From IMG/VR virus record IMGVR_UViG_3300023199_000204, positions 1 through 64,000 of that record: a stretch of DNA of 64,000 bases. The stretch is one strand, 5' to 3'. The notes beneath the pieces were generated by a model, which worked only from the letters and a program-made list of their open reading frames with translations, had not been told where the DNA came from and searched no databases. Shown in pieces: positions 1 through 19,019 of this stretch (position 1 is the stretch's first letter; the number at the start of each line of letters is the position of its first letter). Position numbers and translations under genes: made by a program.

Positions 1-1
1 G

Positions 2-1365: not shown

Positions 1366-1830
1366 ATGACAAGTCTAAAACCACAATATGTGGATGAAAT
1401 CGTAGCTTCTATGGCAGAAATGCTAGGGGACAAGGATTTTATGTCACTTCATAAAAAAGCAGCTTTGGAGAAAGTTGCCAAAAGTACTCAAGAATATCTA
1501 TCAGCATATCAGGCAGCACAATCGCTAAATGAGGTTGAAACAATTCATAATGAGGTTCAGGCAACTAGAGGGTCTAGATCTCAGCAAGAGGAAGAGGCTC
1601 TTCATAATGCTTATCAGAGTGCGAAATCTCGTTTCTCTCCTGGTGAGAAACCAGTTCCTATTATGAGTGATGATGGTCAAGCGGCTGATGACGGAAAAGA
1701 GAATGTAGCAGCTGACTTTGCTCTTAAAAATCTTTCTGAAGTAGCTGACGCACTTGATAGCAACGGTTTTGAACATCTTGCTAATTTTATTGATGAGGCA
1801 ATGACAAAAATAGCTTCAAAAAAAAAATAA
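1366..1830 (+). CDS. Putative internal head protein with LA..LD..G module; possible -1 frameshift extension to 2060
   Basis: GGAGG RBS; motif LSEVADALDSNGFEHLANFIDEAM; ends in an A10 run then TAA, with the -1 frame open to TAA at 2058-2060. Confidence 0.6.
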   Translation: MTSLKPQYVDEIVASMAEMLGDKDFMSLHKKAALEKVAKSTQEYLSAYQAAQSLNEVETIHNEVQATRGSRSQQEEEALHNAYQSAKSRFSPGEKPVPIMSDDGQAADDGKENVAADFALKNLSEVADALDSNGFEHLANFIDEAMTKIASKKK

Positions 1831-2072
1831 CAAAGTCTAAAGATGGCAAGCCTGGAAAATATAAAAACACAGGCGGTGCTCACCCACCACCCAAAAAGTG
1901 GTGGGACAAGATGTCTAAAGAGATTAAAAAAAATAATAAAGATTACTCTAAAGAGAGAATAAGAGAGACCGTGGGTGATATTTGGTATAATAAACTTAGT
2001 AATTCTAAGCGTTCTGAAATATATAAACGTCACGGAAAAAGCAAAAGCCCTAACAGGTAAGGGAGCATAACA

Positions 2073-2591
2073 GTGGTTCTTAAATATAGCGAAAAAAATA
2101 ACAATACTCTTGCTAATGCTATGGCAAGGGCTTTAAATGAAGATTTTGAAAAATTGGCAAAAACCAAATGTAAATGCGGCTGTTTTAACTGCTCTTGCGG
2201 CAAAGCCAAAAATAATGGAAAATGTCCTTGTAATTGTAAATCTTGTAAAAAAACAAAAGTGGCAGAGTTGGAAGATATATCTTATACTATTTTAAGATCA
2301 GCTGACTTATTAGACAAGGTTGGACACTATGATGCTGCTTTAAGTTTATCATATGCTTTAAAGAAATTGGCAGAGAATGGATGTAATTGCCCTGACTGTC
2401 CTGATGAAATTGAGGATATAGACTCAAAAGAAGATTTAGTATATGTAATAAGCAAGGCTTTATTTGATATTTCAGATACTTTAGATAAGCTTGGACACTT
2501 TGATGTTTCAGATAATGTTGATACTGCTCTTAAATCACTATCCGGAAAGAAATGTGATTGCGGGGGATCTTGTTGTAACGGCAACTCTTAA
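2073..2591 (+). CDS. Putative internal head protein with Cys-rich (metallothionein-like) segments and two LA..LD..G modules
   Basis: CxC/CxxC clusters alternate with SADLLDKVGHYDAA and ISDTLDKLGHFDVSDNVD. Confidence 0.55.
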   Translation: MVLKYSEKNNNTLANAMARALNEDFEKLAKTKCKCGCFNCSCGKAKNNGKCPCNCKSCKKTKVAELEDISYTILRSADLLDKVGHYDAALSLSYALKKLAENGCNCPDCPDEIEDIDSKEDLVYVISKALFDISDTLDKLGHFDVSDNVDTALKSLSGKKCDCGGSCCNGNS

Positions 2592-2602
2592 TAGGGGAGT
2601 TT

Positions 2603-3403
2603 ATGTCTAATATTAGCAAGTATATGGAAAATATAAAACTAGATGTTATTAAACTATATACTAAAGATAATTTAAGTTATAATGCTATAGCTAAAAAATT
2701 TAATGTAAGCCAACCCAGTATTAAAAAATATTTAATTAATTGGGGAGTTAAACAAAAACCAGTCTATGAACAAATGAGTTATGTATTACACGATAGACAA
2801 AAAGATGATAGGTGTTTTCCAAAAAATATTCTTAATTTATTAGAAGGTGGTTTGCTTGGTGATGGTGGAGTTTATAATACCAAACTTCAATCTTATTATC
2901 AGCACGGATGTATTAACAAAGATTATATAGATTTTTTAAAAACATATTTTAATAACAATGAAATTATAGCAAACATTTGCTCTATTGCCCCAAAAGGCAA
3001 AAGTGTTAAAAGATTTTATTGTCTAACAACCAGAAGTAGTTTATTTTTAAGGAATATTAGGAATAAGTGGTATAAAGGCAGTATTAAGATAGTTCCAGAA
3101 GATTTTGAATTATGTCCTTTATCATTAAAGCATTGGTGGATAGGTGATGGATATTTAAACCCTGATTGGGGATGGGCTACTATTGCTACGCAAAGTTTTA
3201 CAGAAAAAGAGAATATGTTTTTAAAAAATAAATTAAATAATATTACTGAACATTATATAACCTTACGTCCAAGTGGTAAAGCAGCTCCAGGTAAATTTCA
3301 TCTATATTTATCAAGAAAAGCAATAAATGATCTAATTAATTATATGGGAAGTTGTCCTGTAAAATCGTTTAAATACAAATGGAAGGTTAAAAATGGTATT
3401 TGA
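2603..3403 (+). CDS. LAGLIDADG homing endonuclease (N-terminal HTH plus two LAGLIDADG motifs)
   Basis: GGLLGDGG and HWWIGDGY motifs, ATQSFT..E; AT-rich. Confidence 0.85.
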   Translation: MSNISKYMENIKLDVIKLYTKDNLSYNAIAKKFNVSQPSIKKYLINWGVKQKPVYEQMSYVLHDRQKDDRCFPKNILNLLEGGLLGDGGVYNTKLQSYYQHGCINKDYIDFLKTYFNNNEIIANICSIAPKGKSVKRFYCLTTRSSLFLRNIRNKWYKGSIKIVPEDFELCPLSLKHWWIGDGYLNPDWGWATIATQSFTEKENMFLKNKLNNITEHYITLRPSGKAAPGKFHLYLSRKAINDLINYMGSCPVKSFKYKWKVKNGI

Positions 3404-4088
3404 AATAATACAATCAGGAAATGCTTTACCATTTTTCTATAAACTGGATCCAACTGCTACATTTGAATCAGGGCAAATTGGTCAGCTTAAGCTTATAGGA
3501 AATGATATAGTTGTAGGATTATCTGACGGAACAGCTCCTTTGGGTATTATTGATGATGTAAGAACTACAGCTTTTTCGCAACCTGTTGCCGATGAAGTTG
3601 TAATTATTCAGGGAATAGATATTACTACAGACGGCTATAATACTTACAACGGAAGAGATTCCATAGGTCCACTAGATAATTCCCCAGTTATTGGGTCAAG
3701 CTTTACTTCAGATTATCCAGATGTATCTTTAATCACAACCAATGGAAATTTAATTTTACCAGCCGGGGCAGAGCTTAATTATGATGCCGATGGAGATGGA
3801 ATAAAAGAATCTGTAAGAATGACAGTTAGTTATGTTTATCATGTGGCTGATTTACCTGGTGGAGATACTACATTAGGAAGTGGAAAAGTCACTATTTGGT
3901 TTCAAAGAGGAATTTTTGCTACGGATCAGTATGATACTACTGCCAAATATCCTTTAAACGCAGTATTATTTGTTAATTCTGAAGGAAAGCTTACCACAAG
4001 TCAAACCACTCCTGAACATCCAGGAGTTGCGATGGTTACAGGTCCTCCGGGAGCTACGATAAACACTTTAGAGTTCCTATGGCTATAA
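3393..4088 (+). CDS. Capsid decoration/cement-like protein 1
   Basis: Beta-rich; shares QSGN, SGKVT.W..G and GKLT with the gene directly upstream of the major capsid gene. Confidence 0.55.
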   Translation: MVFEIIQSGNALPFFYKLDPTATFESGQIGQLKLIGNDIVVGLSDGTAPLGIIDDVRTTAFSQPVADEVVIIQGIDITTDGYNTYNGRDSIGPLDNSPVIGSSFTSDYPDVSLITTNGNLILPAGAELNYDADGDGIKESVRMTVSYVYHVADLPGGDTTLGSGKVTIWFQRGIFATDQYDTTAKYPLNAVLFVNSEGKLTTSQTTPEHPGVAMVTGPPGATINTLEFLWL

Positions 4089-5152
4089 ATAATTATTCTT
4101 TAAATGCTAAAAGTCCAAAATGGACTAAAGAAGAAATTGAAAAATTAAAATCTGTTTATAGAGATTACACTTATAAAGATCTAAGTATTATTTTTGATAG
4201 AAGTGTAGAGGCAATTTCACAAAAACTTAGTAGTCTTGGTTATAGTAAATATAATAAATGGACTGAAGAGGAAATAAACTTACTTAAAAAAAAATATAAT
4301 ACAAGTTCTACTGAACAGCTTATAATATTGTTTCCTGCTCATACTTTAGGAAGTATTAATAAAAAGGCAGAAAAATATAATTTAAAACGTCAAAATATAA
4401 AAAGACCAAAATGGACAGATGATGAAATTGGCACCATCCAAATAATGTATGAAAAAGGGTTTTCAGTTTCAGAAATTTCAAAAAAAATTAATAGAAGTGA
4501 AATAGTAGTAAATATTGAAATTGGTTCTTATAAAGCAAAACTTAAGAAATGGACAGCACAAGAAGAAAAAATATTATTAGATAATTATAAAACTTTATCT
4601 TATAAAGAAATTTCAAATCTTCTATCTAACAAAAGTTTAAGTCAAGTTAAAAAGTATGGTAAAAAGCTTAATCTTAACAAAATTGATCCAAGAGGTGTTT
4701 GGACGGCTGAGGAAGAAAAACTTTTAATTGAAAAATATTCTATTTCAACTATAGAAGAGCTTATGAATATTTTTAAAAACAAAGCTAAGTCTCAAATATC
4801 TAAAAAAGCAAAGCATTTGAGATTAAGAAAAACTAAGAAGACATTATCTAGATGTTTTAGAACAAAAATAGATAATTATAATGATATAGTTAAAATTTAC
4901 ACTTCTTCGCGGCAACGTTGGCGTAAAATAGTTTTAAAAAGAGATAATTATACTTGTGTTGATTGTAATTTAAAAGACATTACTGGTTTAATATTACAAA
5001 TTCATCATATTATTCCTGTAAGAAGTTGTAGTAGTAAAGAACAGATTATAGATATTAAAAATGGTATTACTCTGTGTATAGATTGTCATAATAAAGTGAC
5101 AGGTAGAGAGTATAAATTTATAGAAAAGTATCAAAACTTAGTTGAGTTATAA
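4079..5152 (+). CDS. HNH endonuclease with N-terminal W-T-x-E-E (Myb/SANT-like) repeats
   Basis: Five WTxxE repeats; C-terminal RDNYTCVDC..HHIIP..NGITLCIDCH. Confidence 0.85.
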   Translation: MAINNYSLNAKSPKWTKEEIEKLKSVYRDYTYKDLSIIFDRSVEAISQKLSSLGYSKYNKWTEEEINLLKKKYNTSSTEQLIILFPAHTLGSINKKAEKYNLKRQNIKRPKWTDDEIGTIQIMYEKGFSVSEISKKINRSEIVVNIEIGSYKAKLKKWTAQEEKILLDNYKTLSYKEISNLLSNKSLSQVKKYGKKLNLNKIDPRGVWTAEEEKLLIEKYSISTIEELMNIFKNKAKSQISKKAKHLRLRKTKKTLSRCFRTKIDNYNDIVKIYTSSRQRWRKIVLKRDNYTCVDCNLKDITGLILQIHHIIPVRSCSSKEQIIDIKNGITLCIDCHNKVTGREYKFIEKYQNLVEL

Positions 5153-5167
5153 GCCTAGGAGGAATAA

Positions 5168-5569
5168 ATGTCTTTTTCAAAAGAAGATAAAGCTGCTTGG
5201 AACAACAGCGAAATAATGCAGGAGTTTGAAAAAATTGCTGCGGAAATGGAAATTTTTAATGGACCTCCTGAGGAGGCATATCTTCCAATCAAAAATGCTG
5301 ATGACGATTGGGAAGATGAAATTAATGATGATGTTGAAAACAAAAATATTGAAGCGGAAAATAAGAAAGAGGATTTTTTAAAAATAGCAGAATTTGAAAA
5401 AAACTTGCTAGAAAAAAAGAAAACAGTAGATGATAAATTAATCAATGATTTGCGAACCTTGTCCGAAAAATTAATTTCAAAAAGAAAAATTGAGGCAGCA
5501 TATAAAGTGGAGAGGGCCATTTTAGATATTGAGGCACATCTTCAGACGGAGGAAAATAATGACATTTAA
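5168..5569 (+). CDS. Putative internal head protein
   Basis: AGGAGG RBS; N-terminal W..SEIMQEFEKIAAE shared with the 5559 and 9590 proteins; degenerate helical module at the C-terminus. Confidence 0.55.
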   Translation: MSFSKEDKAAWNNSEIMQEFEKIAAEMEIFNGPPEEAYLPIKNADDDWEDEINDDVENKNIEAENKKEDFLKIAEFEKNLLEKKKTVDDKLINDLRTLSEKLISKRKIEAAYKVERAILDIEAHLQTEENNDI

Positions 5570-8500
5570 TTATAGTGGAACAAGTGTTATGGAAGAATTG
5601 GAGAAAATTGCTATAGAAAAAAAATGGCTAACTGTAGAGGCAGGTCCAGACGCAGGTTTAATTAAATCAATTCAGCAGCAAATGAATGAGTTGGTTGGAA
5701 GATTACATAAACCAATGCCTCCTCAATATAATGTATTTCCTCTTGATGTTGATGGTGTTTTTGGACCAAAATCGACAAAAGGTATTAGAGGAATTATGCT
5801 TGTTGCCCAAGATGCTGTTAAAAACACTCCTAATAGACATATGCCTCAACACAGAGAGTTAATTACTGGTATAAGTGAAATGAGCAGGGGGACTCCAGAC
5901 GCTCTTTTAACTGGTCTTAAATATTTAAATAAATATTTTTATGAGAATTGGGGAGAGAAAATTAAACAAAAGGAGCCTCAAATTAAACTTCCTGAATGGG
6001 CAAAAAATAAGCCAGCACCAGTGGGAGATGGAACTGATGAGCCAGACTGGGAGGCACCTGCCGATGATGAAAAAAAATCTTGTTTACATAGCGAAGAGTG
6101 TCCACCAGGTCAGCGTTGTTATCAAGGATATTGCGAAGAATATATGGAAGAAAGCCCAATTAAAGGGGCGTCAAATAAAACTAACTTGGAGAAAATTGCT
6201 ATGAATCCTCGCGAATGGTTTAACAGCTTAGACTACAACACTCAGAGCAGAGTGAGAAGAAAAGTATATGAATTAATGAAAGGAAGAGGTTTTGATCAGG
6301 AAGGGGCTCTTGGAATGGTAATGAGACAAATGAATCCTCCTGAACCAAAACAAAAGCCTCCTCTTAAACAAGAGTGGCCTGATACGCCTGATTTTAATCC
6401 AGATGATTTTTTACGAGAAGTGGAAAGGGGTGTTCAGGAACAATATCCTTCTTTTAAAATGACCTCTTCTGTTATAAACAGTTTGGTTTCTCTTGCCAAT
6501 GATTTAGATGATATGGGAGCAAAAGAGGCTTCTTTTTCTGTTGATAATCAAATTAAGATATATAAAGAAGCTCTTGATAAGCTTTATGATGTAACTGGAG
6601 AAACTGGAGAGCAACTTATTGAAAAAGCACATCCCGGCGGAGGTCCAACAATTGCTCCTTCAAAAGAAGAGGGTGGCAAAGTTGAGACAGTTGTTGAGGA
6701 GCAGAAAAAATCAATTGACAAGGCGACCAAAAAGCCAACTGGAAAATATGCTCAAACAGTGTCAAAACTAATTGCTTTGGCAAATAAGCTTGAAGATGAA
6801 GGGAATGTTAAAGCCGCATTACAAGTGGATGAGTCAATACGGGAAATGAGGGCCTTGCTCCCTTTTTCAAATAGGAGTTCAGTAATTGAGGCAGCTGGCT
6901 CCGAGGACAAAAAAGCCTCGGTTGTTAAGAAAGGTTTTAGTCTTACGGAGACATTGGAAACAGATATAAATGATTATGCTATAGTTCTTGGAATAATGTA
7001 TAAACTGAATCAAGAGCAAAGACCATTGTATTCAGGAGCTTATAAAAACCTTAAAAACCTTTTGTTGAAATATTTATCTAAAGCTAAATATTATGAAAAT
7101 TATTCAAAACAAAGTAATGCCAAAAACTATCACCAATTAATTATATACTATAATAATTTAGAACGGTTTACTAAAAAAATTGTTGATAATTCTGGGACTA
7201 TGTCAGATATGGGAATGTTTTCTATAAGATTAGCATCTCATTTAAGAAGTATTCAAGAAGGGTTAGTTTATCTTGGGAAAGCTATGGATTCATTTGATTA
7301 TACTACTTCACCAAAAAAAGCTCTTGAGCCTCTTTCTGGAAATTCAAGACAAAGGGCAATAAAATCTTATTTAAAAGATCTTAAAACACTAGAAAATTTA
7401 ATACAAACTCAAGATCCAGTAAAAGTTGGTAAAATTTTAAATGGCGGTCTCAAGGCTATAGACCAGCTAGAGAAATGGATTGAAAAAAGAAGATATAATC
7501 TTACAGTTACTGATGGAAACGATAGTTATATTGGTGATAAACTTGAATTGCCTCATATTACACAGTTAAGAAATTATATTTCTAAGTTACAGAAGGGTTT
7601 AGGAAAAACTTCTGGAATAAAGTTTTATAAATTTGTCAAAACTGCTCTTGATGGCGCACCACCAGTTGGCATTGGAGGCGGATCTGCCACTCCACGAAGA
7701 AGAACAAGAAGTGTTGTTAATAGGAAGCCAAAAGACCAACAAGTGGTTAAATTACAGAGGGCTCTTAAAAAAGCAAATTTTGATACTGGCAAAATAGATG
7801 GATATTGGGGAAAAAACACTGCTGCGGCTTTTAACGCAATGCTGGCAAAACTTGGGCAATCAAGGGGCAGAGCTTTCAAACAGTTTAGTGGTGATAAAAA
7901 ACCCAATCCAAAGGTTTTAAGATTTGGAATATATGCTGCCAATTTATATCAAAGAAAAGATATTCCAAAAGGAAGATTTTTTGTTCTTACTGATACTGGA
8001 GAAATAGATTTGCCATTATCTGCATTAAATAGTCCTTCTAGTTTTATTGGGGCTCTGGAACTAAATTCCGTTATAAGGAAAGATCTTTCGGCAGAGGAAA
8101 AGGTTAAAGCAGCCGAAAAAGTTTTAATATTTACTGCTAAGAAATTAAATCCTCCAGATAAAGCTCCATATGTTTTGGGCAGAGTTGAAGACTTAATGGA
8201 TCTAAGTTATATTGATAAAGCTAAAAATAATTTAAGGCTTTTGAATAAAGCATATGTTATGTTAAAACCGTTTGTCTTAAAAGTAAAAAACAAAGAAAAG
8301 GTTGATGAAAAATCTTTAAAACAGAATAAGTTAAAACCTTCTGTTAAAAGCCCTTCTGCTAAAAGAAGTGTTAAACAAAAATTAGAAAAAGCTATGTTAA
8401 AAATTATGCCTGAGCCTGGGCAACTAACAAGCCTTGAATCTTTTGAACGACTTGCTCAAGTAAATAATATGACTGCTAGAGAATATTATCCACTATTAAA

Positions 8501-8648
8501 AAGCAGAATTGTTGGTGTTATGAGATTTATGAAAAACAATAAATCACAGCTTGTTGCTGAGCTTGGTTCTGATGGATTTTTAGATAAGTGGTGGAAATTA
8601 GAAAGAGTAAGCCGTGATCTTGATAGGTTAAAAGCTGCTATCAGATAA
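5559..8648 (+). CDS. Large putative internal/ejection protein with two peptidoglycan-binding-like domains
   Basis: Start moved to ATG 5559 (GGAGG RBS). PG_binding_1-like segments IQQQMN..VDGVFGPKS and LQRAL..IDGYWGKNT; two LA..LD..G modules; a small CxxxxECPPGQRCxxGxC motif. Confidence 0.6.
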   Translation: MTFNYSGTSVMEELEKIAIEKKWLTVEAGPDAGLIKSIQQQMNELVGRLHKPMPPQYNVFPLDVDGVFGPKSTKGIRGIMLVAQDAVKNTPNRHMPQHRELITGISEMSRGTPDALLTGLKYLNKYFYENWGEKIKQKEPQIKLPEWAKNKPAPVGDGTDEPDWEAPADDEKKSCLHSEECPPGQRCYQGYCEEYMEESPIKGASNKTNLEKIAMNPREWFNSLDYNTQSRVRRKVYELMKGRGFDQEGALGMVMRQMNPPEPKQKPPLKQEWPDTPDFNPDDFLREVERGVQEQYPSFKMTSSVINSLVSLANDLDDMGAKEASFSVDNQIKIYKEALDKLYDVTGETGEQLIEKAHPGGGPTIAPSKEEGGKVETVVEEQKKSIDKATKKPTGKYAQTVSKLIALANKLEDEGNVKAALQVDESIREMRALLPFSNRSSVIEAAGSEDKKASVVKKGFSLTETLETDINDYAIVLGIMYKLNQEQRPLYSGAYKNLKNLLLKYLSKAKYYENYSKQSNAKNYHQLIIYYNNLERFTKKIVDNSGTMSDMGMFSIRLASHLRSIQEGLVYLGKAMDSFDYTTSPKKALEPLSGNSRQRAIKSYLKDLKTLENLIQTQDPVKVGKILNGGLKAIDQLEKWIEKRRYNLTVTDGNDSYIGDKLELPHITQLRNYISKLQKGLGKTSGIKFYKFVKTALDGAPPVGIGGGSATPRRRTRSVVNRKPKDQQVVKLQRALKKANFDTGKIDGYWGKNTAAAFNAMLAKLGQSRGRAFKQFSGDKKPNPKVLRFGIYAANLYQRKDIPKGRFFVLTDTGEIDLPLSALNSPSSFIGALELNSVIRKDLSAEEKVKAAEKVLIFTAKKLNPPDKAPYVLGRVEDLMDLSYIDKAKNNLRLLNKAYVMLKPFVLKVKNKEKVDEKSLKQNKLKPSVKSPSAKRSVKQKLEKAMLKIMPEPGQLTSLESFERLAQVNNMTAREYYPLLKSRIVGVMRFMKNNKSQLVAELGSDGFLDKWWKLERVSRDLDRLKAAIR

Positions 8649-8663
8649 AGGTGGGAGAATTTA

Positions 8664-9593
8664 ATGATGACACTTTCTCTACGAGAGGAACGACAACTGT
8701 TGCCACTGTTGGTTAAAGAAGCCGCCATACCTGAATTTCTTGGCGGCTTTTTAAAAACAATAAAAGATAAGACATCATTTCTGTCAAAACCTTTTGAGAG
8801 TTTTTTGGGAACAGTTGGAATTATTGTTGTTGGCAGAATAAGCAAAATTCTGGGATTTCTGGCTTTAATTGGCGAATATTACGGCTTTGGATTAAGTTCT
8901 ATTGGAAAAATGATAGATACTTCTTTAGGATTTAATACCGGGAAACCAAAAATATCTTTATCTGATATAAAAAAAACAGCAAAAGGTGTTATTGACACCA
9001 TTGCTAAAAAAATTGGTTTAAAAGAGGCGGAATTTAAAAACGAATATCTTTTATCAAAGCGGGCAGGGCTTGGAACATTTTTGGGACAAATTTTTAGAGC
9101 AAAGAGATTAAGTTTTGTTAGTATTTTATATGGTTTTATAAGAACATTTGTTAAAGGTTTAATTGCTGCTGGGCTTATTGGTGGTTTAGCTTCTATGACT
9201 GGTCAAAGACCAGCGCCTCCAGTGGGCGGGAAGTCAAAAAGTCTTACAGGGAAATTACAATACTATAAAAATGTTTCTAACAATGTTGAAGATACTTTAA
9301 TAAAATTCCTAAACGCAGAAATAGCAAACTTTTCAAGAGCCTTCGAAGCACAAAAGGGGAGACCATTAAAAGGCTCTTCTGAATTACAAAAAGTATTATA
9401 TAATATAGAAATATTAAATTATGGGAAAAATATTTCTGATTTAAATTTAAGAGATGCTTTTATTGGTCCAGATGTTAAAACTTTGGCAAAAAAGATTTTA
9501 CCAAAAGTTAATTATCAGCCTTTAGCTTCTTCTTCTTCTACAAAAAAAACAAAAGAACTTTTAAAACTTTTAAACGAGGTGAAAAAAAAATGA
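8664..9593 (+). CDS. Putative internal/ejection protein with hydrophobic Gly-rich helices
   Basis: KEAA, KEA and KRA sites; hydrophobic segments such as FLGTVGIIVVG..ILGFLALIG and GLIAAGLIGGLA. Confidence 0.5.
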   Translation: MMTLSLREERQLLPLLVKEAAIPEFLGGFLKTIKDKTSFLSKPFESFLGTVGIIVVGRISKILGFLALIGEYYGFGLSSIGKMIDTSLGFNTGKPKISLSDIKKTAKGVIDTIAKKIGLKEAEFKNEYLLSKRAGLGTFLGQIFRAKRLSFVSILYGFIRTFVKGLIAAGLIGGLASMTGQRPAPPVGGKSKSLTGKLQYYKNVSNNVEDTLIKFLNAEIANFSRAFEAQKGRPLKGSSELQKVLYNIEILNYGKNISDLNLRDAFIGPDVKTLAKKILPKVNYQPLASSSSTKKTKELLKLLNEVKKK

Positions 9594-10963
9594 CCGGACA
9601 ATGGCACGGTAGTGATGTTATGGCTGGCTTTGCCAAAATAGCTGCCGAATCTGGGCTCATTACCTCAGATTTTAATCCGGATAATAAAGATTTCCTTGGA
9701 AATCCAAGTGAAAAAACTCCGGTGAAAGATAAAACAAGGTATGAGCCAACAGAAGATTATAATAATAGATATAATAAAGAGGGTGAAAAGCTTATAGATA
9801 AAGCACATCCTAAAAATGTGGAAGTGGCCGACGCGATGGGCAAAGGTGGTCTCGTTGAAAACGAGAACCAGAGGCAAGAAAAAGATATTGAAGTGGCAAC
9901 AAGAATGCCAAGTGGAGCATTATTTGGAATTCACGCAGATTTAATTAATGATTTGGTAAAACTTGCTAACAAGCTAGATGATGTTGGAAATTATAAAGCA
10001 GCAAGTTTAGTTGATAAAACCATTAGGGAGGTTCGCGGTCTCCCTTTTGATAAAGGCCACTCCATACAGAAAGAAGCAGCTCTATTTGGTCTTGTAGCAC
10101 TAGTTGCTGGTTTAGCACTTCCTTGGATTGCGACAAAACTAAAATTTAGATCTCCTTATGCTAGAAAATCAGGATTAACAGGAAAGCTTGGTTGGATAAG
10201 TGCTGGTGTAGGACTACTTAACCTATTTGGATCTAAACTTACAAGTATCAAAGAAAATCTAAATACTGATTTACAAGATTTATATGATGTTTTGGAAAAA
10301 CTAGATACACCCTCTTCAAAAAAAGCTATAATGATATTAAAGCCACATTTAAATAAGTTTTCAAAAATTAATTTAAGCACAAAAGAGGGTGCGGCCCAGT
10401 TTTTAAATAACTTTCATAAACTAAGTCAGGCTTATCCACAGGTAGAGGCATTAATTAATAATATTATTATTGAATATCAAAGTAATTGGTTTGATAAGTT
10501 AAAAGGATATGTTGGAATGGATGTATTATCCAGATTTAAGGAAAAATATTCAGATTTTAAGACAACATATAAAGAGACACAAGCTTTGGTTAATAAAACT
10601 TTAAAGGTCGGTGGAAAATTAAACCGCAAAGCTATCTCTCTAGGGGGAGCAGCTTCTGGGACCAAACCTTTTTCTCCTAAAGTTATAAGTGATAAACCAA
10701 TTTACAGACTACAGAGATTATTATTTGAAAGTGGATTTAGAGGAAAGAAATGGGAAGGAAAAATTAGTGGAGAATTGGATCAGGCTACTGTAACTGCTGC
10801 CAAAGAACTGGAAAGTCTTTTAAACGCAGCAATGTCGAAAATGCTTAAAAAGAATAATAAAGACCCAGATTTTTTCAACAACTCTATTATAAAAGATGGA
10901 AAGTTAGTAGGCAATGTTAATTCTTTATATAAAGTTATTCAAATTGCTGAAAATATATCATAA
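9590..10963 (+). CDS. Putative internal/ejection protein (paralogous segment with 5559; TM-like helices; PG-binding-like C-terminus)
   Basis: GEKLIDKAHP...GGLVE...LVKLANKLDDVGNYKAASLVDKTI; KEAA followed by hydrophobic LFGLVALVAGLALPW. Confidence 0.55.
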   Translation: MTGQWHGSDVMAGFAKIAAESGLITSDFNPDNKDFLGNPSEKTPVKDKTRYEPTEDYNNRYNKEGEKLIDKAHPKNVEVADAMGKGGLVENENQRQEKDIEVATRMPSGALFGIHADLINDLVKLANKLDDVGNYKAASLVDKTIREVRGLPFDKGHSIQKEAALFGLVALVAGLALPWIATKLKFRSPYARKSGLTGKLGWISAGVGLLNLFGSKLTSIKENLNTDLQDLYDVLEKLDTPSSKKAIMILKPHLNKFSKINLSTKEGAAQFLNNFHKLSQAYPQVEALINNIIIEYQSNWFDKLKGYVGMDVLSRFKEKYSDFKTTYKETQALVNKTLKVGGKLNRKAISLGGAASGTKPFSPKVISDKPIYRLQRLLFESGFRGKKWEGKISGELDQATVTAAKELESLLNAAMSKMLKKNNKDPDFFNNSIIKDGKLVGNVNSLYKVIQIAENIS

Positions 10964-10964
10964 A

Positions 10965-11703: not shown

Positions 11704-11726
11704 TTTAAGAGAATAAGAGGATAATA

Positions 11727-11749: not shown

Positions 11750-11790
11750 AATCCTAAAAAAATTTTTTCACATAGGAGGACAAAGATACT

Positions 11791-12822
11791 ATGTCTTTAT
11801 TTAGTACACATGGAAAGGGAGGCGAGCTTAATGTTGGTTCAACTCGCGATGCCCTTCAACAAATTGTAAAATATGCAACTATTTTAGAAGATTTGCAGCC
11901 AGCAAATACTGCTTTGGCTCAGAGACCCTCATTTTCTGATCAACAGAGAGATGAGCTAGTAAAAAGAGCACTTTTAACCACAGAGGGCAAAATTGCTTTA
12001 GGTCAGGCAATGGCTAACCCCATTAGAAAGAACCTTGATTATCAAGGGGTAGGAAGAAGAGTTCTTGTTGTAGACCCGTTACCACAGGGAGCACTCCCAG
12101 TTTACGAGCGTGACATTGATGTTGCTGCTACTGTTGTTTCAAGCAATGGTTCAGCACCTGAGAGTCGCGTATTCGGTGACAGGGTAACTATTCCTGAGTT
12201 TGAAGTTGTTTCAAACCCGACAGTAAGAATTGCTGAAGTTCGCAGACGTAGATTCAACGTCATTGACCGTGCCCAGCAGAAAGCTCGCCAAGAAATCCAG
12301 GCTCAAGAGGATGCCAACATCTTCTCAGCTCTTGATTTCGCAGCTGACTCAACTCTTGGTGGTGAAAACACTGCTCAGGACATTGCGGACGCTGGTCTTC
12401 TAAAGCGCGACCTTTCTGAAATTAAGGTTCAGGTTGATCGTTGGGACCTTGTAACCACAAAATTCCTTATGAATATCGTTGAATACAATGATATCCTAAA
12501 CTGGGCAACTGGTGGCGGACAAGGAACTGGTGGTGGCGAGGTTGATCCTGTCACTATGCGTGAAATCCTACAGACTGGTCTTTATGCCCATCTTTGGGGT
12601 GCTGACATCATCGTTTCAAAGGTTGTTCCTCAGGGAACTGTCTTCGGTGTTGCCGATCCTGAGTTTATTGGTGTAATGCCTGTAAGACAGGATATTGAAG
12701 TACTTCCTGCAGACGAGCCTAAACAGTTAAAACTTGGCTGGGTAGTAAACGAAATTATTGGTGTTGGCATTGTCAACTCCCGTGGTTGTGCTGTTGGTCG
12801 TAAATCAGTAGCTGTTGGCTAA
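11791..12822 (+). CDS. Major capsid protein (HK97-like fold)
   Basis: 343 aa; PIRKNLDYQGVGRR.LVVDPLPQG.LP.Y, A.QEIQAQED..IF, G.YAHLWGADIIVS..VP.G and LGWVVNE.IG motifs typical of large-phage capsid proteins; strongly biased codons; followed by a terminator. Confidence 0.85.
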   Translation: MSLFSTHGKGGELNVGSTRDALQQIVKYATILEDLQPANTALAQRPSFSDQQRDELVKRALLTTEGKIALGQAMANPIRKNLDYQGVGRRVLVVDPLPQGALPVYERDIDVAATVVSSNGSAPESRVFGDRVTIPEFEVVSNPTVRIAEVRRRRFNVIDRAQQKARQEIQAQEDANIFSALDFAADSTLGGENTAQDIADAGLLKRDLSEIKVQVDRWDLVTTKFLMNIVEYNDILNWATGGGQGTGGGEVDPVTMREILQTGLYAHLWGADIIVSKVVPQGTVFGVADPEFIGVMPVRQDIEVLPADEPKQLKLGWVVNEIIGVGIVNSRGCAVGRKSVAVG

Positions 12823-12848
12823 ACTTAAAACTTAATAACTAATTAAAG

Positions 12849-12884
12849 GATAAAGGGGCTTTGTTCCCCTTTATCTTTTTTTTT
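12849..12884 (+). terminator. Rho-independent terminator after the major capsid gene
   Basis: GATAAAGGGG / CCCCTTTATC stem followed by T9. Confidence 0.9.
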
Positions 12885-12930
12885 GTCGATAAGAGCGACC
12901 CACACCAAATATAACTCGTTAGGAGGTTGG

Positions 12931-13899: not shown

Positions 13900-15024
13900 T
13901 AAGGAATTGATGTTAGACCTAATGAGGGTTAAAAACATTGTTAATAAAATTCCAAGTCAAGCAGATTATATAAAATATGGAAAATATTCCAAAAACACTT
14001 ATATTTCACGAAAACCCTGGTCTAAATGGAACGAGAGTTTGTTTTTATTTTCTAACACCAACAATCTTAATGAAGTTAAAAAGATATCAAATGATGATTT
14101 AATATCTAATTTAAAAAAGCTATATATTAAATTAGGTCGTGTTCCCAAAAAAGACGATTTAAGGATAAGTGAAGGTTCATTATATAGTATGAATGCTTAT
14201 CGCAGGGCATTTGGAGATTTGGCGACAGCTCTAACTTCTGCTAATTTAAAACCAAATTAAATAAAAGGGATTCAAAAGGATGAAATAATAAAAGATATTA
14301 AAAATGTATATTCTTCTTTGGGCACAACACCAAGTTTTAGAATATAGGAAGCTTTCAAAAATAGGATATAGTTTTCCAACAATAAGAGAAAGGTTTGGAT
14401 CTTGGACCAAAGCTTTAATTGCGTCAGGCATCCCAATAATAAACGCAGGAAAAGCTAATAAAGAGTTTATTCTTATTGAGCTAAATAAATGGTATAATAA
14501 AAATAATAATGATGTTAATTGCTTATCTTATTGGACTTTAAGGAAGGCAAAAGCTGCCCGAGAATTTATATTCAGCCCTAGAACAATTAAAAATAATTTT
14601 GATGGAATGTCTTGGGAAGATATAATGAAGAAAATAGATATTAATTATGAAACTCAAGACCCGTTTGTTAAAAAAATATTGTTATATTGGAAAAGATAAT
14701 AATATATATGTTTCTTTGCTTGAATTAAAGACAGGTAATCATTTATTTTATCTAGTAAATAATAACAAGATAAAAGATTACGAATATGAAGCAAAAGTTT
14801 GTAAAGAAAAAAGCTGGACCTGTGATTTTTTAATATTTTGTAATTCTGGAAATAAGGTTTGGTTGGAAATTGACGGAATGAGAAAAAATAGAAAATATCC
14901 ATATTTATTAGGAGAAAATAACAAAATTGAATATTATAAAATTAACAATTTTGATTATGCTATTTTATCTTATAATAACAGGGATTTAATAAAATCTATT
15001 AATTCACTTTTAGGAGTAATATGA
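13886..15024 (+). pseudogene. Disrupted endonuclease: homing-endonuclease-associated repeats plus a PD-(D/E)xK-like C-terminus
   Basis: In-frame TAA at 14258 with sense continuing (IKGIQKDEIIKDIKNVYSSLGTTPS), a frameshift at T4 14335-14338 and another at A7 14670-14676; C-terminal CDFLI..WLEIDG. Confidence 0.7.
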
Positions 15025-15773: not shown

Positions 15774-15837
15774 GCGACTTTAATAAAAAATGTAGCTGTT
15801 GTGGAGATTTTTATAATACAAGGGGAAGTAAAGGCAA

Positions 15838-18351
15838 GTGAGAAAAAAAACAACGGCTGAGTTTATAAGCGATGCGATAAAAGTTCATAAAGGTAAATAT
15901 GATTATAGTAAAACAAATTATATTTCATGTAAAAATAAAGTGGAAATAATTTGCTCTATTCACGGAGAGTTTTTTCAAACAGCGAGCGACCATCTATCAG
16001 GGCATGGTTGTAAAAAATGTAAATTCGATAAATTAAATAAATTAAGAAAGGTAAATTTAAAAGAATTTCTTGAAAGAGCAAGAAAATCTCATAACAATTT
16101 TTATGATTATTCTCTAATAGAGAAAATATATGATTGTAATAATGATAAGTTAAAAATTATATGTCCCATACACAGAATATTTTATCAAACGGCATCTTCA
16201 CATATGTCAGGAATAGGATGTAAAGAATGCTATTATGATAATGTTAGAAAAAATCCTCCAAATCCTACTATTACTTTTGATGAATTTTTAGAAAGAGCAA
16301 AAAAGATATTTAGAAATAAATATAAGTATAAAAACTATGAAAATATTTCTTCAAAAATAACAATAATTTGTCCTATACATGGAGAATATGAGCAATTACC
16401 ATATAGTCATTTAAAAAGTAAAGGATGTGTTAAATGTAGAGGAACTGTAAATAATCTTAAAGTATTTATTAGCAAGGCAAATAATATACATAATTTTAGA
16501 TATGATTATAGCAAATCAGCTTATTCTGGAAATGAAGAGTTAATAACAATAATTTGCCCTATACATGGTGAATTTGAACAGATAGCGAGAACTCATTTAA
16601 GTGGCTCAGGATGTAGATTTTGTTATGGAAAACGTAAAAAAACTACTAAAAAATTTATAAAAGAAGTAATGGAAGTTCATGGGAACAAATATGATTACAG
16701 TAAAGTAGATTATCAAAATTGGAAAACAAAAGTTAAAATAATATGCCCTACTCACGGAGAATTTTTCCAAAGGGCTCGACTTCATCTAAAAGGAGCTAAT
16801 TGTCCCAGATGTGCTAATTCTTTTAGAAAGACTACCAAAGAGTTTGTTAAAGAAGTAATGGAAGTTCATGGAAATACATATAATTATAGTAAAACAAAAT
16901 ATATAAATTCTTATACTAAAATAATAATTATATGTTCTACTCACGGAGAATTTAAACAGAACCCAAGAGTTCATTTAAGGGGATCAGGTTGTAGAATTTG
17001 TAATTTATTTAAGGTTTCTAAAATATCTCAAGATTGGCTTGATAATTTCAAAGGAATAGAAAAAGAGGTTCCTATTACCGTTGGTAAAAATAGATTTATA
17101 GTTGATGGATTTAATAAAAATACAAATACTATATATGAGTTTGATGGAGACTTTTGGCATGGAAATCCAGATGTTTTTAACCTTAATGATAAAAATAAAA
17201 CTGCCAAAATGACTTTTAAAAAGCTTAATGAAAAGACATTAAGAAAAAGAAATGTCTTAATTAATGCTGGTTATAATCTTTTATATATATGGGAAAATGA
17301 TTGGAATAAAATTAAAGGAAGTAAAATGGAAAAATATAATAACGCAATTGAAGTGGATGGAAATAAATTAACAAAAAAATATATAGAGAGTTTAGATGAC
17401 AAACAAAGAGAAAAATTAATAGCCCCTATTTTTCATTATTTTAGAATTAATGGCTTTCAATATCCCGATGATGAGAATAAAATAAAAAAAGATTATAAAA
17501 GGCTTAAAGAAAAAGAATTTGATAAAAATATTACTGAATTATATAATAACGCAAGTTTAGCTACTTATATTTGTAAATATTTTTGTAAAAGTTTTTATAA
17601 AACTACAAGTAGAGGAAAACCACATATGATTGATGTTTTTAATGATGATAAATTATTAAGAAAAGTTATTAAAAATAGATTGGGTTTAAATTGGTATAAA
17701 CAAAAAGGAGAAGATGATGTAGAGGCTTTTACGATTTCATTTAAGCAAATAATCCAAGGAATTCGTTCTAGTAGGCTAGTTCCTATGATTTCTATGTTTA
17801 AGCCTAGCATCGCAAAGTTCATATATCAAAAATATAGTAATTATGGAGATACTATTCTAGATTACTCTGCTGGTTTTGGCGGAAGAATGCTTGGTGCTTC
17901 TGTTTTAGATAGAAGATATATCGGAATAGATCCACTAACTTCTTTTGAAATTAATGATATTATCAAATATCTTCAAATTGAAAACTGTTATTTAATAAAA
18001 GGCATTTCTGAAGAAATATATTTAAAGCATAATTCCATAGATCTATCTTTTTCAAGCCCTCCTTACTATGATCTTGAATATTATTCTAACGATAATACTC
18101 AGGCATATAATAAAGGTGAGAATTATTTTTATAATGTATATTGGAGAAAAACATTAGAAAACTCCTATAAAATGCTTAAAAAGGGAAAAATTTTCGCTGT
18201 AAATGTAAAAGACCAGCCAAAAATGGTTGAAATGGCTGGTGATTTTTTCACATATAAGGAAAAAATTGGCTTGAGAACCATAAGATCTCATCTGAACAAA
18301 AAAAATATAGATCCTACCAAATATGAATATATCTACATATTCGAAAAATAA
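15838..18351 (+). CDS. Fusion of DUF723-like repeats and a Vsr/DUF559-like nuclease with an amino (N4C/N6A) DNA methyltransferase
   Basis: Six YDYS..ICPxHGEF.Q...H..G.GC repeats; YEFDGDFWHG and IWENDW; then ILDYSAGFGGR (motif I) and SPPYY (motif IV). Internal AAGGA RBS plus in-frame ATG at 17326. Confidence 0.8.
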   Translation: MRKKTTAEFISDAIKVHKGKYDYSKTNYISCKNKVEIICSIHGEFFQTASDHLSGHGCKKCKFDKLNKLRKVNLKEFLERARKSHNNFYDYSLIEKIYDCNNDKLKIICPIHRIFYQTASSHMSGIGCKECYYDNVRKNPPNPTITFDEFLERAKKIFRNKYKYKNYENISSKITIICPIHGEYEQLPYSHLKSKGCVKCRGTVNNLKVFISKANNIHNFRYDYSKSAYSGNEELITIICPIHGEFEQIARTHLSGSGCRFCYGKRKKTTKKFIKEVMEVHGNKYDYSKVDYQNWKTKVKIICPTHGEFFQRARLHLKGANCPRCANSFRKTTKEFVKEVMEVHGNTYNYSKTKYINSYTKIIIICSTHGEFKQNPRVHLRGSGCRICNLFKVSKISQDWLDNFKGIEKEVPITVGKNRFIVDGFNKNTNTIYEFDGDFWHGNPDVFNLNDKNKTAKMTFKKLNEKTLRKRNVLINAGYNLLYIWENDWNKIKGSKMEKYNNAIEVDGNKLTKKYIESLDDKQREKLIAPIFHYFRINGFQYPDDENKIKKDYKRLKEKEFDKNITELYNNASLATYICKYFCKSFYKTTSRGKPHMIDVFNDDKLLRKVIKNRLGLNWYKQKGEDDVEAFTISFKQIIQGIRSSRLVPMISMFKPSIAKFIYQKYSNYGDTILDYSAGFGGRMLGASVLDRRYIGIDPLTSFEINDIIKYLQIENCYLIKGISEEIYLKHNSIDLSFSSPPYYDLEYYSNDNTQAYNKGENYFYNVYWRKTLENSYKMLKKGKIFAVNVKDQPKMVEMAGDFFTYKEKIGLRTIRSHLNKKNIDPTKYEYIYIFEK

Positions 18352-18425
18352 CCCACCCCGCCTAAATCTACCTACCAATCACTTATCCATTATCTTTTCT
18401 TTCCAAATATACTAATTAATAACAA

Positions 18426-18446
18426 TTACTAATAGATAGTTATTTC
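18426..18446 (+). promoter_or_regulatory. Candidate late promoter TTACTAAT-N7-TATTTC
   Basis: Matches the recurrent motif; directly upstream of GGAGG and ATG 18458. Confidence 0.55.
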
Positions 18447-18457
18447 GGAGGAAAAAG

Positions 18458-19019
18458 ATGTCTAAAAAGATTAAAAACCTTATTATGTTGGCGGACTCTC
18501 TTGATAAAGAAGGGAAGTTTGCTGATGCTGATTATATTGATAATTTAATTCACTCCTTTGCGGCAAAAAGTCCGCCAAAAAAAATATAAACAAACTGGGG
18601 CAAAAAATAAAAGTGATTATGCTGACCCAAAAAATTATAAATATCCCATACATACGGAGAAGAATGTAAGGTCTGCTCTATCATATTTTAGTCAGTCCAA
18701 AAATTACAATAAATATTCTCCAAGTGAGAGAGGCTCTATTTGGTCAAAAATCAAACGAGCAGCTAAAAAGTATAATATTAAACTCGATCCAAAGAACGAT
18801 CCTCCTTGGGGCAAAAAGTCTAAAACAGCAAAATTAAACCAAGAGATGGTAGATTTATTAGCTGGCTCTGGGCTTTGTATTAATGGACAAGACACATTTA
18901 ATAAATATTTAGATTTCTTAAATACACTAGATGATAATGAATTATCTGTTTTTAAATTCAGACTACAGCCATTTTCTGGCTCTAGTAGTGGGGAATCATA
19001 TGATACAAGCCTCAACTAA
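18458..19019 (+). pseudogene. LA..LD..G module fused to a DUF6582-like domain, split by +1 at A8 (18577-18584)
   Basis: ATG 18458 with GGAGG RBS reads MSKKIKNLIMLADSLDKEGKFADADYIDNLI..SPPKK. Removing one A joins it to YKQTG..YADPKNYKYPIHTEKNVRSALSYF..IKRAAKKYNI. Confidence 0.65.

What the first reader, a model, noticed from the sequence alone, without database searches (positions are those of the whole stretch)
1366..19019. Shared LA..LD..G...A..VD helical module across many head-region proteins: a candidate capsid-packaging signal
Seen in otherwise unrelated proteins: LSEVADALDSNGFEHLANFIDEAM (1366), ILRSADLLDKVGHYDAA and LFDISDTLDKLGHFDVSDNVDTAL (2073), LRTLSEKLISKRKIEAAYKVERAI (5168, degenerate), LVSLANDLDDMGAKEASFSVDNQI and LIALANKLEDEGNVKAALQVDESI (5559), LVKLANKLDDVGNYKAASLVDKTI (9590), and LIMLADSLDKEGKFADADYIDNLI (18458). 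The attached cargo differs: Cys clusters, PG-binding domains, TM helices, a DUF6582-like domain. By analogy with the T4 internal-protein capsid-targeting sequence, this may be a portable tag that recruits cargo into the prohead core. If so, it could be used to load proteins into capsids.
Basis: partly seen in the sequence, partly recalled or inferred. Interest (0 to 1): 0.82.

Follow-up and report, generated by a model that had tools for sequence, protein, structure and literature searches.

The report
Portable helical hairpin on phage head proteins
Several genes next to the capsid gene of an uncultured giant phage share a real, previously unnamed 32-34-residue two-helix hairpin that usually sits at the very end of proteins. 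It is probably a docking tag for building or loading the phage head, but that role is inferred and untested.

Summary
The window is the first 64 kb of a 316-kb IMG/VR jumbo-phage contig whose capsid protein is 53% identical to that of Bacillus phage G. The module is real. A profile built only from other genomes recovers six of the eight listed copies (17.5-45.5 bits; shuffles reach at most 11.9). The two ORF2073 copies are not significant, and the ORF5168 type is only weakly linked to the rest.

The module is widespread. It occurs in 770 clusters among 1.84 billion representatives. No match was found in Pfam, PHROGs, NCBIfam, 185,579 species genomes or the cultured-phage collection, and it is absent from the phage G locus examined.

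AlphaFold predicts an independent helix-turn-helix hairpin (pLDDT 81-91). Modules lie at extreme N- or C-termini about four times more often than chance. In 59 relatives' capsid loci, all 110 lie upstream of the capsid gene, between prohead protease and capsid. Some relatives also carry distal arrays of small genes that each begin with the module.

Best reading: a portable docking hairpin that brings scaffold-like, envelope-penetrating and accessory proteins into the prohead. It would work like the P22 or 80alpha scaffold capsid-binding ends or the T4 capsid-targeting sequence, but belongs to none of those families. Function is untested.

The carriers are partly paralogous, not unrelated.

The parts
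1..1117 (+). C-terminal part (listed as ORF 23-1117) of a large head protein cut by the contig start. Its relatives are products of about 1,200-1,300 aa.
   Evidence: it aligns to the last 270-340 residues of open frames of 1,222-1,313 aa. The equivalently placed 1,043-aa protein of L023 carries a head-maturation-protease domain; equivalence to it is by gene order only, since no L023 match was listed. No module.
1366..1830 (+). ORF1366 (154 aa). Its module lies at 1714-1815 and ends 5 residues before the stop.
   Evidence: 28.9 bits with the non-window HMM; 20.6 bits with its whole sub-family left out; orthologues in relatives carry the same C-terminal module.
2073..2591 (+). ORF2073 (172 aa, Cys-rich), with two module-like stretches at 2274-2375 and 2442-2543.
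   Evidence: Not significant independently: 7.2 bits or no hit. Marginal hits fall mostly on module regions, and the gene sits where relatives carry a second 1366-type paralogue, one of them Cys-rich.
5168..5569 (+). ORF5168 (133 aa, acidic, mostly disordered). Scaffold-like by inference. N-terminal motif at 5189-5245 and a diverged C-terminal hairpin at 5432-5533.
   Evidence: N-motif 31.0 bits. The hairpin scores 21.4 bits only when its own sub-family is in the model and -0.6 bits when it is left out. ESM model pTM 0.32, pLDDT 0.52. Orthologues occur in the same gene order across the clade.
5559..8648 (+). ORF5529/5559 (about 1,029 aa). N-terminal motif at 5583-5633, module a at 6465-6566, conserved linker, module b at 6750-6851, and a PG_binding_1 domain further on.
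   Evidence: 24.9 and 32.3 bits; PG_binding_1 27.9 bits against a cut-off of 23. AlphaFold: two separate hairpins at pLDDT 86-91, linker below 50, pTM 0.28. 46 orthologous segments aligned.
8664..9593 (+). ORF8664 (309 aa, hydrophobic segments). Conserved neighbour between the two large module proteins; carries no module.
   Evidence: Orthologues at the same position in 11 loci; no HMM hit.
9590..10963 (+). ORF9590 (457 aa). N-terminal motif at 9599-9664, a 92-aa block shared with ORF5529 at 9782-10051 that includes the module at 9935-10036, then a hydrophobic segment and a confidently folded helical C-terminal domain.
   Evidence: 45.5 bits. 50 orthologues at 31-42% identity keep the module. 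AlphaFold places the hairpin at residues 110-149, pLDDT 81-89. Block homology E 2e-22.
11791..12822 (+). Major capsid protein. Its first 45 or so residues (11791-11931) are an N-terminal extension conserved in the module-bearing clade and absent from phage G.
   Evidence: phrog_2522 5e-76; 53% identity to phage G gp27; extension comparison. Its role as the module's partner is inference only.
18458..19019 (+). A 43-aa ORF that is little more than the module (18461-18562), overlapping a DUF6582 ORF (18558-19019) in the +1 frame. An A8 run lies at 18577-18584.
   Evidence: 17.5 bits and 19.5 bits with its sub-family left out. DUF6582 63.2 bits against a cut-off of 27.3. The junction read across the A-run matches the continuous module-DUF6582 junction of P0090. 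A8 is present in contigs of two samples.

Best explanation
The module is an autonomous helix / Gly-turn / helix hairpin of 32-34 residues. Its core pattern is L..[K]hA..LD..G....A..hD.TI..h, where h is a hydrophobic residue.

It acts as a portable protein-docking unit in a large clade of uncultured jumbo myoviruses related to phage G. It has been spread by duplication and domain shuffling onto the ends, and sometimes the interior, of several kinds of protein:
- scaffold-like proteins;
- envelope-penetrating (PG-binding or transmembrane) proteins;
- small accessory proteins.

Most likely role: during head assembly the hairpin docks its carrier to a common, highly conserved partner inside the prohead. 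The partner would be the inner face or N-terminal extension of the major capsid protein, or the scaffold core. Carriers are thereby co-assembled and enclosed. Some would later be ejected with the DNA.

What is shown: existence, spread, hairpin prediction, terminal bias, position next to the protease and capsid genes, and variety of attached parts.

What is inferred: the partner, packaging into the head, any removal by the protease, and ejection.
For: Independent profile support for six of eight copies and sub-family cross-validation.

The module is conserved in orthologues that are otherwise only 31-42% identical, while the capsid protein stays 85-91% identical in the same close relatives and about 64-81% in the more distant ones.

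Spread and naming:
- 770 clusters at E<=1e-3 among 1.84 billion representatives.
- No Pfam, PHROGs or NCBIfam model matches.

Structure:
- AlphaFold hairpins at pLDDT 81-91 with disordered flanks. Two modules in one chain get no fixed mutual arrangement (pTM 0.28), so each looks like a free docking unit.
- Conserved hydrophobic positions are wider than one hairpin needs: 3, 4, 7, 8, 10, 11, 14 on helix 1 and 22, 23, 26, 30, 33 on helix 2. This implies a partner surface.

Position in proteins: 84 of 256 modules lie within 8 residues of a terminus against 19.9 expected. For proteins up to 700 aa the figures are 80 of 160 against 18.2.

Position in genomes:
- All 110 modules in 59 capsid-bearing loci lie upstream of the capsid gene, 105 of them within 10 kb.
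- In L023 the order is protease protein, module protein, 232-aa protein, module protein, module protein, 220-aa protein, capsid.

Cargo fits internal or ejection proteins: PG-binding domain and hydrophobic segments.

Precedents:
- The T4 capsid targeting sequence brings diverse internal proteins into the core (PMC3012670, PMC9026906).
- 80alpha scaffold and SaPI1 CpmB share a C-terminal capsid-binding motif that grips the capsid N-arm (PMC5644958).
- The P22 scaffold has a helix-turn-helix essential for coat binding (10.1101/2022.12.13.520362, abstract as listed).
Against: - There is no direct evidence that any carrier is in a prohead or virion. No cultured relative with the module was found, so no proteome exists.
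- Three of the six window carriers hold the module internally, not terminally.
- No conserved protease-type cleavage motif is evident at the module borders.
- Part of the sharing is plain paralogy.
- In relatives, arrays of small module-first genes lie about 100 kb from the head genes. They sit beside a transcription-antiterminator-like gene or an anti-restriction-like gene. These could be early, non-virion proteins.
- Terminal-bias statistics treat related proteins as independent and depend on gene calls.
- Phage G has the same capsid family but no module, so the module is not required by this capsid fold.
Confidence: 0.45

Rival explanations
1. The hairpin is a self- or hetero-association unit: hairpin pairs with hairpin to form four-helix bundles, or a hairpin grips the N-terminal amphipathic helices of partner proteins. 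It links these proteins to each other, for example as an ejection-protein complex that spans the cell envelope, rather than targeting them to the capsid shell.
For: - Most of the best-scoring proteins carry two or three modules. Some are mini-proteins of 61-95 aa made of little else.
- The hydrophobic stripes are broad.
- ORF5168, 5529 and 9590 each combine an N-terminal helix motif with a hairpin.
- The nearest solved sequences are designed helical-repeat and TPR hairpins, which pack side by side.
Against: AlphaFold gives no confident packing of the two modules of ORF5529 despite 47 aligned sequences (pTM 0.28). ESM models of ORF1366 and ORF5168 are not compact (pTM 0.36 and 0.32). The top-hit list is biased towards multi-module proteins because scores add up.
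Confidence: 0.2
2. There is no targeting role. The module is simply the best-conserved structural remnant of an expanding paralogue family of head proteins, like the paralogue families of SPN3US and phiKZ heads. The rest of each protein has diverged beyond recognition.
For: Clear paralogy among the carriers:
- a 92-aa shared block in ORF5529 and ORF9590;
- a shared N-terminal motif in three carriers;
- two paralogues of the 1366 type in relatives.

Giant phage heads are known to hold variable paralogue families (PMC5694885).
Against: - The module is joined to recognisably unrelated domains: DUF6582, PG_binding_1, zinc ribbons, ferritin-like.
- It occurs at the N-terminus, at the C-terminus or at both.
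- The terminal bias and the independence of each hairpin in models fit a shuffled unit better than a decayed common core.
Confidence: 0.15
3. The module serves a function outside the virion. For example, it could bind a host or phage cytoplasmic hub protein, with the small module-first proteins acting as early host-takeover or anti-defence factors. Its presence on head-region proteins would then be secondary.
For: There are arrays of 6-11 small module-first genes far from the head genes. One lies next to an anti-restriction-like gene (phrog_7245), another next to an antiterminator-like gene.
Against: In every capsid-bearing locus the modules sit between protease and capsid. In T4, packaged internal proteins are themselves anti-restriction factors encoded away from the head genes (PMC3012670; map), so this context does not contradict packaging.
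Confidence: 0.1
4. Chance or convergent resemblance of generic amphipathic helix-turn-helix sequence, with no common origin.
For: The ORF2073 stretches and the ORF5168 type fail independent profile tests. Idealised designed hairpins match the core pattern at E 3e-5 to 4e-3.
Against: Six copies score 17.5-45.5 bits against a model from other genomes, while shuffles stay at or below 11.9 bits. The module is conserved in orthologues across 45 loci. Nothing else in 64 kb of six-frame translation scores.
Confidence: 0.03

Closest known systems
T4 capsid targeting sequence (CTS) of internal proteins IPI, IPII, IPIII and Alt
   Same: A short shared element on otherwise diverse proteins that brings them into the prohead. 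In T4-like phages the internal proteins are highly diverse, share only a conserved CTS, and act as anti-restriction factors (PMC3012670, PMC9026906). The arrays of small module-first genes in relatives look similar.
   Different: The T4 CTS is a 10-20-residue N-terminal propeptide removed by gp21. The module here is a 32-34-residue hairpin found at the C-terminus, in the interior or at the N-terminus. It has no sequence similarity to T4 IPs (negative HMM scores). Cleavage is unknown.
C-terminal helix-turn-helix coat-binding domain of the P22 scaffolding protein
   Same: A helix-turn-helix that docks an otherwise extended or disordered assembly protein to the capsid protein (10.1101/2022.12.13.520362 and PMC11565965, abstracts listed). 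From my own knowledge, the truncated P22 scaffold is used as an encapsulation tag in P22 nanocages.
   Different: No sequence match to any P22 chain in the PDB at E<=10. From my own knowledge, P22 binding relies on basic residues, whereas here the conserved polar positions are acidic (D15, D27). In P22 the element is on one protein; here it is on many.
80alpha scaffolding protein and SaPI1 CpmB C-terminal 'helix-and-hook' (RIIK motif)
   Same: Two different proteins share one homologous C-terminal motif that binds the N-arm helix of the capsid protein and compete for it (PMC5644958). This is the best precedent for one capsid-docking motif on several proteins. The capsid protein here also has a conserved N-terminal helical extension.
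   Different: That motif is 16-21 residues, a single helix plus hook, with RIIK. No such motif occurs here, and the hairpin is twice as long and acidic.
Long propeptides and paralogue families of giant phage heads (SPN3US, phiKZ)
   Same: Giant myovirus heads hold many internal or ejection proteins. These occur in variable paralogue families, with N-terminal propeptides thought to target them to the prohead (PMC5694885, PMC10052503).
   Different: It is a different phage lineage and a different sequence family (pfam12699 there; no Pfam hit here). The proposed targeting parts there are over 100-residue N-terminal propeptides, not a short hairpin.
TPR and designed helical-repeat hairpins
   Same: A helix-turn-helix unit of about 34 residues with small residues where the helices cross. 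The only PDB sequence matches are designed TPR and helical-repeat proteins.
   Different: The module occurs singly, or as two copies 60 to over 300 residues apart, not in tandem arrays. No Pfam TPR model matches. The PDB matches cover only 16-21 core positions.
Encapsulin cargo-loading peptides (own knowledge, not tested here)
   Same: A short terminal tag on diverse cargo proteins that binds the inner face of an HK97-fold shell.
   Different: Those are short extended peptides of about 10 residues, not helical hairpins, and there is no sequence relation. This is a comparison of principle only.

Membership tests
T4 capsid targeting sequence | N-terminal propeptide of 10-20 residues | tested here: not met
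   The module is 32-34 residues. In the window it is C-terminal (ORF1366, ORF5168), internal (ORF2073, 5529, 9590) or N-terminal (ORF18458 only). N-terminal copies are common in relatives.
T4 capsid targeting sequence | Sequence similarity to the IPII/IPIII/IPI propeptides | tested here: not met
   The T4 IP proteins were taken from NC_000866. Both the module HMM and the N-motif HMM give only negative scores on them.
T4 capsid targeting sequence | Removed by the prohead protease after assembly | not testable with these tools
   No proteome exists. No conserved cleavage-like motif was seen at the module borders.
T4 capsid targeting sequence | Necessary and sufficient for enclosure in the prohead | not testable with these tools
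   This needs fusion and deletion experiments.
P22-type scaffold coat-binding helix-turn-helix | Helix-turn-helix fold | tested here: met
   AlphaFold predicts hairpins H110-131/H135-149 (pLDDT 81-89), and H16-35/H39-63 and H113-130/H134-150 (pLDDT 86-91).
P22-type scaffold coat-binding helix-turn-helix | Located at the C-terminus of the scaffolding protein | tested here: inconclusive
   It is C-terminal in ORF1366, ORF5168 and in 3-4 adjacent head proteins of many relatives. It is internal or N-terminal elsewhere. Which protein is the scaffold is inferred, not shown.
P22-type scaffold coat-binding helix-turn-helix | Sequence homology to P22 gp8 | tested here: not met
   A profile search of all PDB chains at E<=10 returns no phage scaffold chain.
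P22-type scaffold coat-binding helix-turn-helix | Binds the capsid protein | not testable with these tools
   No multimer modelling or assay was available.
80alpha SP / SaPI1 CpmB helix-and-hook | C-terminal 16-21 residues: one amphipathic helix plus a hook with the RIIK motif | tested here: not met
   The column profile of 103 modules shows no RIIK-like hook and shows two helices.
Tetratricopeptide repeat | Match to TPR profiles and tandem arrays of three or more units | tested here: not met
   No TPR family in the Pfam scans. There are one to three well-separated copies per protein.
DUF6582 (PF20223), for ORF18558 | Pfam gathering score | tested here: met
   63.2 bits against a cut-off of 27.3.
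PG_binding_1 (PF01471), for ORF5529 | Pfam gathering score | tested here: met
   27.9 bits against a cut-off of 23, residues 736-767.
Phage G-type major capsid protein (phrog_2522) | Full-length profile match | tested here: met
   5.2e-76 over 11-338 of 343 residues; 53% identity to phage G gp27.

The most novel reading that the evidence does not exclude
The hairpin and the N-terminal amphipathic helices form a two-part docking code. The hairpin would grip a helix, either the conserved N-terminal extension of the capsid protein or the N-terminal motif of partner proteins. This would give the clade a general, exchangeable system for loading proteins into very large capsids. The same system would deliver arrays of fast-evolving small proteins, possibly anti-defence factors, into the host with the DNA. 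It would be a T4 internal-protein strategy invented independently with a different, structured tag usable at either end of a protein.
Probability: 0.15. Interest if true: 0.85.

Novelty: new variant of a known kind. Interest (0 to 1): 0.6.

Why it matters
How giant phages fill their heads with dozens of internal and ejected proteins is largely unknown, and no scaffold counterpart has been confirmed for several giant phages (PMC5694885).

This finding offers a compact, recognisable element for that question. It is a 34-residue hairpin present in 770 protein clusters of an uncultured jumbo-phage clade. It is tied to the protease-capsid interval and sits at protein ends.

If it proves to be the loading signal, three things follow:
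- It would let one predict the packaged proteome of these phages from sequence alone.
- It would flag candidate injected anti-defence proteins.
- It would offer a small structured tag for putting foreign proteins into large HK97-fold shells.

If it is only an association domain, it is still an undescribed, widespread viral protein module that deserves a family entry.

Tried and rejected
- **Phage G and LR745208 head regions.** No module, and no analogous shared terminal motif seen by eye in phage G gp11-gp28.
- **Cultured-phage collection.** No tblastn match for ORF9590 or a two-module mini-protein.
- **Species genomes.** Two scans found no relative.
- **Foldseek of the ORF9590 model against the PDB.** Only insignificant helical-bundle matches.
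- **ESM Atlas.** Only unnamed viral clusters for ORF1366 and disordered-protein look-alikes for ORF5168.
- **Short contigs for two-module proteins.** No useful context.
- **Capsid N-terminal extension as a copy of the N-terminal motif.** Rejected: the N-motif HMM does not hit it.
- **N-motif 'QEF' resemblance to the T4 CTS.** Rejected: -3.6 bits.
- **EF-hand reading of 'LD..G'.** Rejected: the Gly spacing differs and the predicted turn is only about three residues.
- **ORF11047 as a homologue of the phage G decoration protein gp26.** No similarity. ORF3393 and ORF11047 as paralogues: only a 21-residue match.
- **Conserved protease-site motif after N-terminal modules.** None evident.
- **Literature.** Five searches found no description of this motif.
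Full report
**What the window is.** The window equals the first 64 kb of IMG/VR contig IMGVR_UViG_3300023199_000204, which is 316,473 bp long. All the genes discussed here lie on the + strand, and G+C is about 33%. The gene at 11791-12822 is the major capsid protein: phrog_2522 at E 5e-76, with Bacillus phage G gp27 as best cultured relative at 53% identity. Of the ten largest products in the remaining 45 kb, only three have PHROGs matches with an assigned function: a tail sheath, a virion structural protein and an HNH endonuclease. No early or replication genes were recognised. The head region is interrupted by homing endonuclease genes. The first listed ORF (23-1117) is the C-terminal part of a much larger protein cut by the contig start. 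It aligns to the last 270-340 residues of open frames of 1,222-1,313 aa in relatives. A similarly placed 1,043-aa protein in the more distant locus L023 carries a head-maturation-protease domain.

Leaving out one protein at a time within the window gave these scores:
- ORF9590: 28.3 bits.
- ORF18458: 24.3 bits.
- ORF5529: 13.8 and 11.2 bits.
- ORF2073: 8.5 bits, E 0.13 (not recovered).
- ORF5168: 3.8 bits (not recovered).
- ORF1366: 1.0 bit (not recovered).

Relatives resolve this. I collected 95 modules from other genomes and built a model from those alone. That model gave these scores, against at most 11.9 bits in 20 shuffled controls:

| Copy | Score |
|---|---|
| ORF9590 | 45.5 bits |
| ORF5529b | 32.3 bits |
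| ORF1366 | 28.9 bits |
| ORF5529a | 24.9 bits |
| ORF5168 | 21.4 bits |
| ORF18458 | 17.5 bits |
| ORF2073b | 7.2 bits |
| ORF2073a | no hit |

Leaving out whole sub-families keeps all types linked except the ORF5168 type. For that type only 2 of 23 members pass, and the window copy scores -0.6 bits.

In short, five copies in four proteins are solid. ORF5168 is a diverged or analogous C-terminal hairpin. ORF2073 is supported only by its position and by marginal hits that fall mostly on module regions.

**The carriers are not unrelated.**
- ORF5529 and ORF9590 share a 92-residue block ending in the module (46% identity, E 2e-22). This block, with module a, is the best-conserved part of the ORF5529 family.
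- ORF5168, 5529 and 9590 also share an N-terminal motif (W..S.VM.EF.KIA). A model of it built from relatives finds exactly these three proteins in the window.
- ORF1366 has two paralogues in relatives.

**Spread.** ORF9590 has about 50 orthologues at 31-42% identity, all keeping the module. In 60 IMG/VR loci an iterated profile finds 121 modules in 46 loci. A profile of 103 modules finds 770 clusters at E<=1e-3 among 1.84 billion representatives. Searches elsewhere were negative:
- No Pfam, PHROGs or NCBIfam model matches it.
- No relative appears in 185,579 species genomes.
- None appears in the cultured-phage collection.
- None appears around the capsid genes of phage G or LR745208.

**Anatomy.** AlphaFold predicts a helix / three-residue turn / helix hairpin. 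In ORF9590 it spans residues 110-149 at pLDDT 81-89, with disordered flanks. In the two-module segment of ORF5529 both hairpins reach pLDDT 86-91. The conserved linker stays below 50 and pTM is 0.28. The hairpins therefore look like independent units on a flexible tether and not one bundle.

The column profile shows nearly invariant L7 and A11, strong L14, G18, A23, I/V26 and I30, and acidic D15 and D27. The hydrophobic stripes are broader than a lone hairpin needs, which points to a partner surface. The only solved sequences that match are designed TPR and helical-repeat hairpins.

**Where it sits.**
- In proteins: among the 142 best representatives, 84 of 256 modules lie within eight residues of a terminus against 19.9 expected. 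For proteins up to 700 aa the figures are 80 of 160 against 18.2. Relatedness inflates the nominal significance.
- In more distant relatives: three or four adjacent head proteins each end in the module 1-8 residues before the stop.
- In genomes: in 59 loci with a capsid homologue, all 110 modules lie upstream of the capsid gene, 105 of them within 10 kb. In L023 the order is protease protein, module protein, 232-aa protein, module protein, module protein, 220-aa protein, capsid.
- Relative conservation: the capsid protein is 85-91% identical in the close relatives and 64-81% in the more distant ones, while the carriers drift to 31-42%.

**A second setting in relatives.** Some contigs carry arrays of small genes that each begin with the module. 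One array has 11 genes in 10 kb and another has 6. One array lies about 100 kb from the head genes of the same 232-kb contig. Its neighbours include an antiterminator-like gene. In another contig the neighbour is an anti-restriction-like gene. This resembles the T4 internal-protein loci, which are encoded away from the head genes and counter restriction (PMC3012670). The expression time of these arrays is unknown.

**Mechanism.** I commit to a docking hairpin that brings its carrier into the assembling prohead by binding a conserved partner. Candidate partners are the capsid protein and the scaffold core. The capsid protein of this clade has a conserved N-terminal extension of about 45 residues that phage G lacks. 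The scaffold core would include the disordered acidic ORF5168 type. My confidence is about 0.45.

Precedents exist for one capsid-docking element on several proteins:
- The T4 capsid targeting sequence (PMC9026906).
- The 80alpha scaffold and SaPI1 CpmB helix-and-hook, which grips the capsid N-arm (PMC5644958).
- The P22 scaffold helix-turn-helix.

Membership in each was tested and not met: there is no similarity to T4 IPs, no scaffold chain in the PDB search, and no RIIK hook. It may work like them but is a new sequence family.

The rivals are a hairpin-hairpin or hairpin-helix association unit, a mere paralogue remnant, a role outside the virion, and chance. Chance remains open only for ORF2073 and partly for ORF5168.

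**Limits.** There is no proteome, no cultured host and no multimer model, and only 64 kb of the 316-kb genome was available. Terminal positions depend on gene calls.

Noticed in passing
window 18458-19019 (A8 run at 18577-18584): The 43-aa module ORF and the DUF6582 ORF overlap in different frames. Skipping one A of the A8 run joins them so that the junction reads SPPKK-YKQTGA. This matches the uninterrupted module-DUF6582 junction TPPKKYRETGA in a relative's protein, P0090. The A8 run is identical in assembled contigs of two samples. It is therefore a real +1 shift site (programmed or transcriptional slippage, or a split gene) and not an error of a single assembly.
   Followed up: partly
It is found by a model built from relatives only, at 31.0, 18.4 and 32.5 bits, and nowhere else in the window. 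Other module carriers have family-specific N-terminal amphipathic helices in the same place.
   Followed up: partly
window 6606-6869 and 9782-10051: ORF5529 and ORF9590 share a 92-residue block, ...AHP...GG.VE(T/N)..(E/Q)Q.K...P.G... followed by the module (46% identity). The stretch before the module is highly conserved yet predicted disordered. It could be a binding or cleavage segment.
   Followed up: partly
window 11791-11931: The capsid protein carries a conserved N-terminal extension of about 45 residues with a predicted amphipathic helix (..ALxQIVKYA..). It is present in all 38 listed relatives of the module-bearing clade and absent from phage G. It is a candidate propeptide or docking site.
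   Followed up: partly
window 1-1117: The first ORF is the C-terminal part of a larger protein (1,200-1,300 aa in relatives) cut off by the contig start. The similarly placed 1,043-aa protein of L023 carries the prohead protease domain, so the protease domain itself probably lies outside the window.
   Followed up: yes
window 2603-3403, 4079-5152, 12883-14260, 23090-24421: The head gene cluster is peppered with homing endonuclease genes: two LAGLIDADG, an HNH with Myb-like repeats, ORFs with homing-endonuclease-associated repeats, and another HNH further on.
   Followed up: partly
window 19081-19368 and 19372-19640: The 95-aa ORF19081 and the first 90 or so residues of the 758-aa ORF19372 (which ends in a Laminin_G_3 domain) are paralogous. 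Both match the same 92-121-aa proteins of relatives.
   Followed up: partly
window 20001-22000: G+C rises to 0.47 here against about 0.33 elsewhere, inside the C-terminal half of ORF19372. Long antisense ORFs appear as a side effect. The cause was not examined.
   Followed up: no
L066/L067 1700-10430; L068 4300-13400: Relatives carry arrays of 6-11 adjacent small genes that each start with the module and then diverge completely. One array is next to an anti-restriction-like gene (phrog_7245).
   Followed up: partly
window 15838-18351: An 837-aa ORF with several repeats of a Cys/His-rich unit of about 60 residues (weak DUF723 match), followed by a long unassigned C-terminal part. It sits between the homing-endonuclease block and the module-DUF6582 gene.
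   Followed up: no
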